From positions 1-64,000 of the IMG/VR virus record IMGVR_UViG_3300046517_002304: DNA of 64,000 bases, one strand, 5' to 3'. Below, piece after piece: positions 10,753-25,194 of this stretch (its first letter is position 1; every line of letters begins with the position of its first letter). A model generated the notes under the pieces. It made no database searches. It was given only the letters and a program-made list of their open reading frames with translations, and was not told the DNA's origin. The translations under genes and the position numbers were made by a program.

Positions 10753-10819
10753 TAGCCCAAACTGGCAATTAGCAAGTTTATTCCTTTCCTTATCTTTTTT
10801 ATACGGCCAGTTTGGGCTA
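10753..10819. repeat. Perfect 14-bp inverted repeat with 39-nt loop
   Basis: TAGCCCAAACTGGC (10753-10766) / GCCAGTTTGGGCTA (10806-10819). Confidence 0.9.
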
Positions 10820-23091: not shown

Positions 23092-23260
23092 TAATTAAAT
23101 CAGATAGCATCTGCTGCATAGACTGACATTCGTCATTGCTTCCTGTAGCAAAAAATCGCCACTTATCAGCACAATAAATCTCTAAACAACTTTCACACCA
23201 AGGTTCATCTTCTGTTTCAACAATTCTAATTCTATTCATTTTTGCACCTCTACGAGCCAA
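23048..23260 (-). CDS. Hypothetical protein
   Basis: Short ORF; true start may be MNRIR at the ATGA overlap. Confidence 0.45.
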   Translation of the reverse strand: MARRGAKMNRIRIVETEDEPWCESCLEIYCADKWRFFATGSNDECQSMQQMLSDLINEVRQDRIDSDIND

Positions 23261-23475
23261 CCAAGGGGATTTCCAAAAAACCTCGCCGGAGCATTGTGGG
23301 GAATCTTAAGCACTTTATTTAGATCGCCCCACTCAACTGAAAGTTTTCTAGAACTTCCTTTTCGCCTAAATTCTATTCGGTCATGATACATCGTAACAAT
23401 AACCGGTCCTTTAACTCCAAAGTTATCAGAAACCTCTAACTCTCTCTTCACCGGCTTTTCAAGCTTTGTGGCCAT
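23236..23475 (-). CDS. Small basic hypothetical protein
   Basis: 79 aa, AAGGA SD. Confidence 0.7.
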   Translation of the reverse strand: MATKLEKPVKRELEVSDNFGVKGPVIVTMYHDRIEFRRKGSSRKLSVEWGDLNKVLKIPHNAPARFFGNPLGWLVEVQK

Positions 23476-23492
23476 GATAACTTTCCTTTATG

Positions 23493-23557
23493 AACTCGCC
23501 ACTGAAATTATTATAAAAATTCACCTCCTCAGGGCATCAGTGGCGAGTTTGTTTTTT
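23493..23557. repeat. Perfect 13-bp inverted repeat with 31-nt loop containing TCACCTCCT, followed by a T-tract
   Basis: AACTCGCCACTGA (23493-23505) / TCAGTGGCGAGTT (23537-23549). Confidence 0.9.
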
Positions 23558-23654
23558 AAAGTATGTTAACTAAAGTAATTCATTATAAATAACAAGCATA
23601 GTGAATTTTATCATCTGTCTATAGCCTGTTTAAATCATTTCAATAGCCAATACT

Positions 23655-24560
23655 TTATAGGTCGTCAATATTAATATTCTTCAAAAAATCGTCGTCTGTA
23701 AGAGCCATGTCTACGTCAGCAGTAGCAAAATCTTCCTTCTTAGACGAAGAAGCGGCCACCTTTGTAACTGTAGCTGGTGCTTTATCAAATGGAGCACGCT
23801 CCACTTTTACAGACTCATCAACCTCTAGACCGCGAAAAATATTTACTTCTTTTAATAGAACGTCAAACGGCTGTGGCTTCTTCCAAGAATTTAGATCATG
23901 GCATTCAGCAAGCCACTCCTTGCAAACCTTCTTATCCTTATGCAAGGGACTTGCGTCCATAAATTCGCTACTCTTCCAGTTTGGATATTCACCCTTAAGT
24001 TCTCGGACGCAATTTAGATCACGGCCAGTTTCAATATCCGTAATATCGCCGAAGCCCTTCTTGTTAAGAAGTGGATTGCCTACGATTGACTTGATAATGT
24101 AAGTGTGAAGTTCTTTTCCTGCACTCAAAATCTTATGAAAGACATCGTACTTTGCTTCGCCCTTTTCGTCAATTTCCTTGCGGACAACAACATTATAGAA
24201 ATAACGTTCAACTGGCTTAATAGAACGAGCCTGTGCTTGTAGTTCTTTTACTTGATTTTCACTTAGATCAGGATTCTCTGACTTCTTCCATAGCGAAGAA
24301 TAAAATTCGCATACTGGACACTGACCCTGCCACATTCCACCGACTAAATTCTTTGAGCACTGAAATCGCTTACCGTTAATAGTATGATTTCTAATAGCCA
24401 CATAAATTGTATCGTTATCATGGCTAGGAGGAAGAATGCGAACTATTGTGCTGCATTCGCCAGGCGGGAAGCGAACAAAGTCCTTAAGAAAATTCTTATT
24501 CTGTCCATTACCTTCAACTCGCTCCAACTCGCTCTTAAATGCTTCTAAATTAATACCCAT
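23655..24560 (-). CDS. gp32-like single-stranded DNA-binding protein
   Basis: VRILPP, H..C..CPVCE Zn site, RYFYNVVVR, DITDIETGRD, acidic tail; start MGINLEAF after GGAG. Confidence 0.85.
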   Translation of the reverse strand: MGINLEAFKSELERVEGNGQNKNFLKDFVRFPPGECSTIVRILPPSHDNDTIYVAIRNHTINGKRFQCSKNLVGGMWQGQCPVCEFYSSLWKKSENPDLSENQVKELQAQARSIKPVERYFYNVVVRKEIDEKGEAKYDVFHKILSAGKELHTYIIKSIVGNPLLNKKGFGDITDIETGRDLNCVRELKGEYPNWKSSEFMDASPLHKDKKVCKEWLAECHDLNSWKKPQPFDVLLKEVNIFRGLEVDESVKVERAPFDKAPATVTKVAASSSKKEDFATADVDMALTDDDFLKNINIDDL

Positions 24561-24645
24561 TTTCTTCTCCGTATTGTTAAAAAATTGTTTCTTGATAGTA
24601 CTTATATCGTCCTGGTTTTTAAAACACATTATATAATTCTGAGAA

Positions 24646-25194
24646 TTATTTACAATCTTGTGTTTTTGCCATTAGCTTACCAACAGAATCTTTGCAAAAA
24701 CTTGCCTGTCTTCGTTCAATTAATTCAAAAATTACATTAACTAGCAAATTTTGTTCCGTAAATGATTGAGTTAATTCATCGCATACAAGCGGATCTTCCG
24801 TCAAAAACTTAAACCCAGCATCTTTAAACTTCTGCATCTCGCTCTCAACCGATTCTGTAGAATATGCACAATGATGTACCCCGCCAATGTTACCTCTATT
24901 AGCAACATATTTTGCTACGATGGACTCTGGATCGGAACTAGAAGAAATAAACAAATCTGGCATAGTCTGATACCTAATTCCATCATGCTCAATAATTCTA
25001 GGAGCGTCCTTTTTATCTTTTAGTCCTTTAGGCATCAAGACCGTGCATTTCGTACTTTGCGTGCTTCCATCAGGAAACTCGGGTTCAAATTTATCTGCTA
25101 TCTCATAACCAAACAAATTAACAAACATATCGCAGGCTGCGTCATGATTATTGCGGTTGATACGAAAAGCAATATGGTCTAAAGAATTAATCAT
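24646..25194 (-). CDS. VOC-family protein resembling the HPPD C-terminal domain
   Basis: LDHIAF, GGVHHCAY, LTQSFT, FELIER..F (H/H/E metal triad). Confidence 0.75.
   Translation of the reverse strand: MINSLDHIAFRINRNNHDAACDMFVNLFGYEIADKFEPEFPDGSTQSTKCTVLMPKGLKDKKDAPRIIEHDGIRYQTMPDLFISSSSDPESIVAKYVANRGNIGGVHHCAYSTESVESEMQKFKDAGFKFLTEDPLVCDELTQSFTEQNLLVNVIFELIERRQASFCKDSVGKLMAKTQDCK

What the first reader, a model, noticed from the sequence alone, without database searches (positions are those of the whole stretch)
23493..23557. Hairpin displaying a perfect anti-Shine-Dalgarno/SD 9-mer in its loop
Seen: a 13-bp perfect stem; the loop holds TCACCTCCT (23521-23529), followed by TGTTTTTT on +. On the coding (-) strand the loop reads AGGAGGTGA with no ATG at SD distance, and the real downstream gene has its own AAGGA. 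Known: UCACCUCCU matches the 16S rRNA 3' tail. Inference: as + RNA it could mask SD-led mRNAs; as - RNA it could trap 30S subunits or bind CsrA. Either would favour leaderless phage mRNAs. The mundane alternative is a processing stem downstream of the SSB gene.
Basis: partly seen in the sequence, partly recalled or inferred. Interest (0 to 1): 0.6.

Follow-up and report, generated by a model that had tools for sequence, protein, structure and literature searches.

The report
Hairpin after phage SSB gene
The hairpin is real, but it is this huge soil phage's version of the stem-loop that follows the single-strand-binding-protein gene in all its relatives, and the ribosome-binding-site look-alike in its loop is absent from them, so it is most likely an ordinary message-end or stability signal and not a ribosome decoy.

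Summary
Arms 23493-23505 and 23537-23549 pair perfectly over 13 bp around a 31-nt loop. The loop holds TCACCTCCT at 23521-23529, and TGTTTTTT follows on the + strand. The window is the start of a 511-kb phage from soil and rhizosphere metagenomes.

The hairpin lies in the 179-nt gap between a gp32-like SSB gene and a 79-aa gene, both on the - strand, 4 nt before that gene's own AAGGAAAG.

All four related lineages I could fetch also carry a strong hairpin at the SSB 3' junction, each with an unrelated stem sequence. Two are textbook terminators with a 4-6 nt loop and a U-run. One has a 12-bp stem, a 23-nt loop and a U-run. One has a 16-bp stem, a 5-nt loop and no U-run. None shows an SD or anti-SD word in its loop.

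The 9-mer occurs twice in the genome, about the chance number, and the other copy is coding. I found no Rfam match, no + strand promoter, no repeat family and no RNA data.

Best reading (confidence 0.55): a derived SSB terminator hairpin acting on the - strand mRNA as a 3'-end or stability and uncoupling element. A lineage-specific 30S-docking role for the loop, like STAB-SD, is not excluded (about 0.12). Interest is low.

The parts
23493..23505 (-). One arm of the 13-bp perfect stem (the 3' arm on the - strand RNA)
23506..23536 (-). The 31-nt AT-rich loop. On the + strand it begins AATT, the tetraloop of this genome's canonical terminators. On the - strand it holds TATAAT and AGGAGGTGA.
23521..23529 (-). 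The 9-mer: TCACCTCCT on the + strand, AGGAGGTGA on the - strand. It is an orphan SD-like word with no start codon at SD distance. Its mean unpaired probability is 0.56, because a small CCU/AGG helix can form inside the loop.
23537..23549 (-). The other arm of the stem (the 5' arm on the - strand RNA)
23550..23557 (.). T-run on the + strand, which reads as an A-run 5' of the stem on the - strand. The coding (-) strand has no U-run after the stem.
23481..23488 (-). AAGGAAAG, the SD of the 79-aa gene. It lies 4 nt after the stem and 5 nt before the ATG at 23475.
23236..23475 (-). 79-aa gene of unknown function. The family starts MATKLxKP. The model is all-beta with mean pLDDT 70 and has no PDB match. 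The homologous gene follows the hairpin in L079 and L005.
23655..24560 (-). gp32-like SSB gene. The longest ORF runs to 24629, but relatives align only from Met24, and GGAG lies 7 nt before the ATG at 24560.
24628..24655 (-). Sigma-70-like promoter candidate for the SSB gene: TTGTAA, 16 nt, TATAAT, 10 of 12 matches
23557..23657 (-). About 100 nt of long imperfect hairpin filling the rest of the gap (-21.4 kcal/mol, z = -3.8). It is absent from the shorter gaps of the relatives. It overlaps a weak extended -10 promoter candidate at 23634-23605.

Best explanation
The hairpin is this phage's version of the stem-loop that ends the SSB (gp32-like) message in the whole group of related phages. It acts as RNA on the - strand. 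The SSB gene has its own promoter-like site just upstream. After the SSB stop codon the transcript forms the 13-bp stem, which ends 4 nt before the next gene's SD.

In more distant relatives the equivalent hairpin is a canonical Rho-independent terminator. Here the U-run on the coding strand is gone and the loop has grown to 31 nt. Polymerase probably reads through in part. The stem would then serve mainly as a barrier to 3' exonucleases, giving a stable 3' end to the abundant SSB mRNA. It would also uncouple SSB output from the small genes and the UvsX-like recombinase downstream.

The SD-like 9-mer is a feature of this lineage's enlarged loop and not the conserved functional part.

Shown: the structure, its position, and a hairpin at the same junction in five lineages. 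Inferred: that it works at the RNA level, and the roles in stability and attenuation.
For: 1. Non-chance stem. z = -4.3 on the - strand and -5.6 on the + strand, with 0 of 200 shuffles as good. Long stems are about 20-fold enriched in non-coding DNA.

2. The same junction in every relative fetched.
- L005 (SSB 52% identical): 16-bp stem, 5-nt loop, 11 nt before the ATG of the homologous 77-aa gene.
- L079 (SSB 41% identical over a partial gene; 77-aa gene 68% identical): 12-bp stem, 23-nt loop, then CTTTTTAT.
- L114 (39%) and L115 (34%): GC-rich or 16-bp stems, 4-6 nt loops, then U-runs, followed by the RecA/UvsX gene.
- Energies run from -17 to -27 kcal/mol and z from -5 to -9.
- The stem sequences are unrelated, and each is perfectly paired.
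- In L079 and L005 it is the only stem of 12 bp or more in the DNA held for that locus.

3. The SSB gene has its own promoter-like site (TTGTAA-16-TATAAT) and an AU-rich leader. A unit boundary after the gene is therefore expected.

4. On the + strand the loop begins AATT, the tetraloop of this genome's canonical A-run/stem/AATT/stem/T-run terminators. This fits descent from such a terminator.
Against: - The coding strand has no U-run after the stem (CAUAAAGG). The U-run is on the opposite strand, so classical termination of the SSB message is unlikely here.
- A 31-nt loop is far outside the usual range for terminators and stabiliser hairpins.
- The distance to the downstream start is steadier (11-19 nt in three lineages) than the distance from the SSB stop (12-105 nt). 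That could mean the element belongs to the downstream gene's 5' end instead.
- There are no RNA data of any kind.
- Only four relatives were available.
Confidence: 0.55

Rival explanations
1. STAB-SD-like or standby element. The hairpin lies in the 5' untranslated region of the 79-aa/UvsX operon, transcribed from a promoter inside the gap. The orphan AGGAGGTGA in its loop docks a 30S subunit without initiating. This protects the downstream message from 5' decay or raises the local ribosome supply for the weaker AAGGAAAG site 35 nt further on.
For: - The word is a perfect 9-nt SD with no start codon at SD distance.
- It is rare for a given loop. Only 5 loci in the genome match the generic SD complement over 9 nt or more (a sixth has AGAAAGGAG lacking GGAGG), and none of them is a working RBS.
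- A weak extended -10 promoter candidate lies at 23634-23605.
- The hairpin keeps a tight distance to the downstream start in three lineages.
- STAB-SD is an established precedent: an SD-like sequence in the cry3A 5' UTR that does not initiate but binds 30S and blocks RNase J1 (PMC4113751).
Against: - The loops of L079, L005, L114 and L115 have no SD-like word.
- The similarity of the window's word to a GAAGGTGA upstream of the L079 hairpin is not significant: 70 of 500 shuffles scored as well.
- The GGAGG core is partly paired within the loop, with unpaired probability 0.15-0.24 for three bases.
- The host and its RNases are unknown.
- The transcription start is unknown.
Confidence: 0.12
2. 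DNA-level or promoter reading. The AT-rich loop carries a promoter for the downstream genes, with TATAAT on the - strand. The arms are then a leftover terminator or an operator-like palindrome, giving a compact terminator-promoter composite like the PeSLs of T4-type phages.
For: - A perfect TATAAT lies in the loop on the gene strand.
- Elsewhere in this genome, terminator hairpins are followed directly by a promoter-like motif and a short leader, for example at 326037-326070.
- PeSLs are described as composite terminator/promoter motifs (PMC4122927).
Against: - No -35 or TG element sits at a workable spacing, by my reading. The consensus scan lists no promoter in the loop.
- The element is unique in the genome and in IMG/VR apart from the same phage. 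PeSLs are repeated families.
- L005 has only a 5-nt loop, so a promoter inside the loop cannot be the conserved feature.
Confidence: 0.1
3. A + strand RNA ends at this hairpin plus U-run and displays UCACCUCCU in the loop. It would be an anti-SD sponge or a C-rich-loop regulator, or a cis-antisense RNA over the 79-aa gene's start.
For: - The + strand stem extends to 16 pairs through G-U pairs and is followed by UGUUUUUU, the only terminator-like flank of the element.
- The loop word equals the 16S 3' tail (my own knowledge).
Against: - No + strand promoter-like site lies between 22883 and 24278.
- A 31-nt loop is atypical for a terminator.
- The anti-SD word is not conserved in any relative.
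- The U-run orientation is not conserved. L079, L114 and L115 have it on the coding strand.
- The phage's own genes use SD words.
- No RNA data exist.
Confidence: 0.05
4. Host CsrA-type control. One GGA sits in the hairpin loop and a second in the SD of the 79-aa gene, together binding a CsrA dimer that represses that gene.
For: Two GGA motifs lie about 40 nt apart, one in a loop and one in the SD.
Against: - The hairpin loops of the relatives contain no GGA.
- The loop is much larger than typical CsrA hairpin loops (my own knowledge).
- The host is unknown.
- The 79-aa protein has no Pfam or PHROG match, so none to CsrA either.
Confidence: 0.04

Closest known systems
Rho-independent terminators and intercistronic stabiliser hairpins after phage gene 32-type SSB genes
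   Same: A strong stem-loop lies directly after the SSB gene, at a transcription-unit boundary. In the relatives L114 and L115 the equivalent element is a textbook terminator. On the + strand the loop starts with the AATT tetraloop of this genome's own terminators.
   Different: The loop is 31 nt. The coding strand has no U-run, which lies on the opposite strand instead. The stem abuts the next gene's SD.
STAB-SD 5' mRNA stabiliser of Bacillus thuringiensis cry3A (PMC4113751)
   Same: An SD-like sequence fully complementary to the 16S 3' end lies in an untranslated region and has no start codon to serve.
   Different: STAB-SD sits near the 5' end of a mapped transcript and is not described there as lying in a hairpin loop. 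Here the transcript ends are unknown, the word is in a loop and partly paired, and it is not conserved in relatives.
PeSL composite promoter-terminator cassettes of T4-type phages (PMC4122927, PMC2839356)
   Same: A stem-loop combined with a promoter-like AT-rich segment lies between small genes of a phage with T4-like replication genes.
   Different: PeSLs are repeated, sequence-conserved families within a genome. This hairpin has no second copy.
C-rich-loop regulatory RNAs of Firmicutes that pair with SD regions (RsaE/RoxS type; my own knowledge)
   Same: An unpaired pyrimidine-rich word complementary to SD sequences is displayed in a loop, if the + strand is read.
   Different: There is no evidence of a + strand transcript or promoter. 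The word would sit in the terminator's own loop. It is not conserved.

Membership tests
Rho-independent (intrinsic) terminator | Stable, fairly GC-rich stem directly downstream of a gene | tested here: met
   13 perfect pairs, -23 kcal/mol, z = -4.3 and -5.6. It lies in the gap after the SSB stop codon.
Rho-independent (intrinsic) terminator | Short loop of about 3-10 nt | tested here: not met
   The loop is 31 nt. The consensus scan, which allows loops of 3-8 nt, does not list it.
Rho-independent (intrinsic) terminator | U-run right after the stem on the transcribed (gene) strand | tested here: not met
   The - strand continues CATAAAGG. The T-run is on the + strand only. The relatives L079, L114 and L115 do have it on the gene strand.
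STAB-SD-type 5' stabiliser | SD-like word complementary to the 16S 3' end that does not serve a start codon | tested here: met
   AGGAGGTGA has no ATG, GTG or TTG 3-13 nt downstream that opens an ORF of 40 codons or more.
STAB-SD-type 5' stabiliser | Lies in the 5' untranslated region, near a transcript's 5' end, and binds 30S | not testable with these tools
   No RNA run holds the locus. The only lead is a weak promoter candidate at 23634-23605.
STAB-SD-type 5' stabiliser | Kept in related genes or relatives | tested here: not met
   No SD-like word appears in the hairpin loops of L005, L079, L114 or L115. The similarity to the word upstream of the L079 hairpin is not significant.
Anti-SD / C-rich-loop small RNA (+ strand reading) | A discrete transcript with its own promoter on the + strand | tested here: inconclusive
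   No promoter-like site lies on the + strand between 22883 and 24278, but only sigma-70 consensus was scanned and no RNA data exist.
Anti-SD / C-rich-loop small RNA (+ strand reading) | Conserved unpaired pyrimidine seed | tested here: not met
   The seed is absent from all four relatives.
PeSL promoter-terminator cassette | Repeated, sequence-conserved copies across the genome | tested here: not met
   blastn-short of the gap against the 511-kb genome finds only itself. The pattern scan of IMG/VR finds only the same phage.
PeSL promoter-terminator cassette | Stem-loop joined to an early promoter | tested here: inconclusive
   TATAAT is in the loop but no -35 is present.
Any curated RNA family (Rfam 15) | Covariance-model match at or near the gathering score | tested here: not met
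   No match at gathering score in the window. The best permissive matches across 23300-23800 score 13-22 bits against cut-offs of 40-100.
CsrA binding site | GGA in a hairpin loop plus a second GGA at the SD, conserved among relatives | tested here: not met
   Two GGA motifs are present here, but the hairpin loops of the relatives have none.

The most novel reading that the evidence does not exclude
In this 511-kb soil phage, a former SSB terminator hairpin has gained an enlarged loop that displays a perfect orphan SD. The loop docks host 30S subunits without initiating. It would act either as a STAB-SD-like shield and standby platform for the downstream recombination genes, or in bulk as a mild ribosome decoy. 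This would be a lineage-specific invention. The non-conservation argues against an ancestral role but does not exclude a recent one.
Probability: 0.12. Interest if true: 0.55.

Novelty: new member of a known kind. Interest (0 to 1): 0.2.

Why it matters
If the best reading holds, this is routine phage gene organisation. A stem-loop marks the end of the SSB message and separates a highly expressed gene from its neighbours. Its value is mostly for annotating an uncultured 511-kb soil phage.

It also shows how a terminator can drift. Across five lineages the junction runs from a canonical terminator to a U-less, large-loop hairpin. Only if the loop's orphan SD really binds 30S subunits would it be of wider interest, as a phage example of non-initiating SD elements.

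Tried and rejected
- Repeat or mobile element: the hairpin has no second copy in the genome and appears in IMG/VR only in the same phage.
- Known RNA family: none found. The window has no tRNA or tmRNA.
- Pseudoknot or long-range pairing of the loop with its flanks: duplex energies are no better than for shuffled loops on either strand.
- Homology of the SD-like word with GAAGGTGA upstream of the L079 hairpin: 17 of 21 positions are identical, but 70 of 500 shuffles score as well.
- Similarity between the two large loops in the window (23493 and 10753): not significant beyond the shared AATT(A) start.
- RegB-type cleavage at GGAG: no RegB match in the phage genome, though the control genomes gave no match either, so this is weak.
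- Phage-encoded RNase III: none found.
- Small ORF served by the loop SD: there are no canonical start codons. Only ATT or ATA lie nearby, with stop codons soon after.
- Integron attC-like site: considered because the element is 57 bp and runs AAC...GTT. The R''/R' consensus and the extrahelical bases are missing, by my reading.
- Invertible segment or strain variation: contigs of four other soil and rhizosphere runs are identical where they cover the stretch. Two of them do not cover the hairpin itself. Read laying was given 2,701 letters.
- 79-aa protein as an RNA-binding regulator: the model is all-beta with mean pLDDT 70 and has no convincing PDB match.
- Closer relatives: the contig of the 74%-identical SSB (P0002) could not be read. 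IMG/VR holds only distant SSB and UvsX relatives.
- Other points: the big representative protein search was not used. No alternative genetic code was used.

Full report
**Context.** The window is the first 64 kb of a 511,233-bp virus record with direct terminal repeats, 39% G+C. The same sequence appears in soil and rhizosphere metagenomes. No cultured phage is close: megablast finds nothing, and the best UvsX-like matches are below 40% identity.

Around the finding all genes lie on the - strand:
- a gp32-like SSB (Pfam PF08804, PHROG SSB families);
- a 79-aa gene and three further small genes;
- a RecA/UvsX-like recombinase;
- a dCMP deaminase.

The SSB gene most likely starts at the ATG at 24560, because relatives align only from residue 24 and GGAG lies 7 nt upstream. 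It is preceded by a good sigma-70-like promoter candidate, TTGTAA-16-TATAAT.

**Observation.**
- a perfect 13-bp inverted repeat at 23493-23505 and 23537-23549;
- a 31-nt loop;
- TCACCTCCT at 23521-23529;
- TGTTTTTT on the + strand at 23550-23557.

Both strands fold the hairpin at about -23 kcal/mol, and no shuffle did as well. On the - strand, 4 nt separate the stem from AAGGAAAG, and the ATG of the 79-aa gene is at 23475.

Long perfect stems are strongly concentrated in non-coding DNA in this genome. With my own crude ORF calls, 18 lie in 46.9 kb of non-coding DNA and 9 in 464 kb of coding DNA. The stem is therefore very unlikely to be chance.

The 9-mer is less clear-cut. It occurs twice in the genome, near the number expected from composition, and the other copy is inside a reading frame. 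Only five loci match the generic SD complement over 9 nt or more (a sixth has AGAAAGGAG, which lacks the GGAGG core), and none of them is a working ribosome-binding site. The word in the loop is thus unusual for a single loop, but it is a post-hoc pick.

**Comparison with relatives, the key result.** Protein searches with the SSB and the 79-aa protein gave two syntenic relatives. A further SSB search gave two more distant ones. All carry a strong hairpin in the gap after the SSB gene.

| Locus | SSB identity | Stem | Loop | After the stem | Next gene |
|---|---|---|---|---|---|
| L005 | 52% | 16 bp | 5 nt | no U-run; ATG 11 nt on | homologous 77-aa gene |
| L079 | 41% (partial gene) | 12 bp | 23 nt | CTTTTTAT | homologous 77-aa gene (68%) |
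| L114 | 39% | GC-rich | 4 nt | U-run (canonical terminator) | RecA/UvsX |
| L115 | 34% | 16 bp | 6 nt | U-run (canonical terminator) | RecA/UvsX |

The stems have no sequence in common, yet each is perfectly paired. In L005 and L079 the junction hairpin is the only stem of 12 bp or more in the DNA held for that locus. Energies run from -17 to -27 kcal/mol and z-scores from -5 to -9.

None of the four loops contains an SD or anti-SD word. A hairpin at this junction is clearly conserved.

**What the window's version looks like.** Canonical terminators in this genome have the form A-run, 13-15 bp stem, AATT or ATTT tetraloop, stem, T-run. On the + strand, the finding's loop begins AATT right after the arm. 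So does the loop of the only other large-loop hairpin in the window (10753-10819, 14-bp stem, 39-nt loop). Both look like such terminators with 27 or 35 extra bases in the loop, although the two loops are otherwise not similar.

In the finding the U-run survives only on the strand opposite to the genes. I therefore read it as a derived SSB terminator hairpin. It can no longer terminate the SSB message efficiently. It still forms in the - strand mRNA, where it can set a nuclease-resistant 3' end and uncouple SSB expression from the downstream small genes and the recombinase. The RNA-level role is inference, because no RNA run holds the locus.

**Rivals.**

(a) STAB-SD-like docking of 30S at the orphan SD in a 5' untranslated region.
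- The precedent is real (PMC4113751).
- The tight spacing to the downstream start and the weak promoter candidate at 23634-23605 fit it.
- The word is not conserved and is partly paired within the loop.

(b) A promoter in the loop, or a PeSL-like composite (PMC4122927).
- TATAAT is present on the gene strand.
- There is no -35 element.
- The element is unique in the genome.
- L005's 5-nt loop rules this out as the conserved feature.

- Only the terminator-like flank supports it.
- No promoter is found.
- The word is not conserved.
- The phage's own starts are enriched in SD words.

(d) A CsrA site. The relatives' hairpin loops have no GGA.

Further checks were negative:
- no Rfam match;
- no tRNA in the window;
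- no significant pairing between loop and flanks;
- no RegB or RNase III gene in the phage;
- no sequence variation or inversion in other metagenome contigs.

**Verdict.** The structure is real and functional, and of an ordinary kind. The striking loop word is lineage-specific and most likely incidental. A recent 30S-docking role cannot be excluded without RNA or binding experiments.

Noticed in passing
G000 (the window's 511-kb genome), about 262-394 kb, outside the window; e.g. upstream of the genes at 325559-325792 and 372952-373131 (- strand): The motif TAGTTATCC(A/G)T(A/T)A lies about 8-12 nt before the ATG of some 50-70 small genes, nearly all on the - strand. The same word forms inverted pairs at 260-277 kb. 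It looks like a phage-specific promoter, or a processing or translation signal, that gives very short leaders.
   Followed up: partly
window 10753-10819: A second large-loop hairpin: 14-bp perfect stem and 39-nt loop, lying between two + strand genes just before a GGAG..GTG start. Like the finding, its loop begins AATT on the + strand. On the gene strand it holds the anti-SD-like TTCCTTTCCTT. The U-rich flank is again on the strand opposite to the genes.
   Followed up: partly
G000, e.g. 85974-86005, 300830-300863, 326037-326070, 440478-440511: The canonical bidirectional terminators of this phage share one design: A-run, 13-15 bp stem, AATT or ATTT tetraloop, stem, T-run. At 326037 the terminator is followed directly by the TAGTTATCC motif and the next ATG, a compact terminator-promoter composite.
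   Followed up: partly
window 24560-24655 (- strand): The SSB gene probably starts at the ATG at 24560 (301 aa), not at 24629. GGAG lies 7 nt upstream and relatives align only from Met24. An 85-nt gap upstream holds TTGTAA-16-TATAAT and an AU-rich leader, reminiscent of the unstructured autoregulatory leader of T4 gene 32.
   Followed up: partly
window 23557-23657 (- strand): The first 100 nt or so after the SSB stop codon fold into a long imperfect hairpin (-21.4 kcal/mol, z = -3.8, 1 of 200 shuffles as good). It is absent from the shorter gaps of L005 and L079 and overlaps an extended -10 promoter candidate.
   Followed up: partly
IMG/VR loci L016, L023, L031, L035, L039, L040, L049, L053-L059, L065-L071, about 18 nt after the gp32 stop: About 30 distant gp32 loci (25-31% identity) share an element downstream of gp32. 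ACCG..CGGT and GGCACCC..GGGTGCC interleave like an H-type pseudoknot and are followed by a T-run. Covarying variants exist: GCCG/CGGC, GGCGCCC/GGGCGCC and GGCAGAC/GTCTGCC.
   Followed up: no
G000 355829-355839 (+ strand): AGAAAGGAGGT, the longest match to the generic SD complement in non-coding DNA (two coding sites match equally long), lies between two - strand genes. On the gene strand it reads ACCTCCTTTCT, which mimics the 16S tail, about 42 nt before the start at 355787. It could pair with that gene's AGAAAG site.
   Followed up: partly
whole genome G000: AGGAGG is about two-fold under-represented (65 on both strands against about 147 expected from composition), and only 8 copies sit at RBS distance from an ORF start. 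The phage's working SDs are short (AAGGA, AGGAG, GGAGA).
   Followed up: yes
window 23236-23475 (- strand) and the homologs in L005, L079, L080-L103: The 79-aa protein belongs to a small family found in large phage contigs. It has an invariant N-terminus MATKLxKP and a GNPLGWLV motif. The model is all-beta and has no Pfam, PHROG or PDB match. Some non-syntenic homologs also have a 7-10 bp hairpin 21-36 nt before the start (L098, L087, L089, L103).
   Followed up: partly
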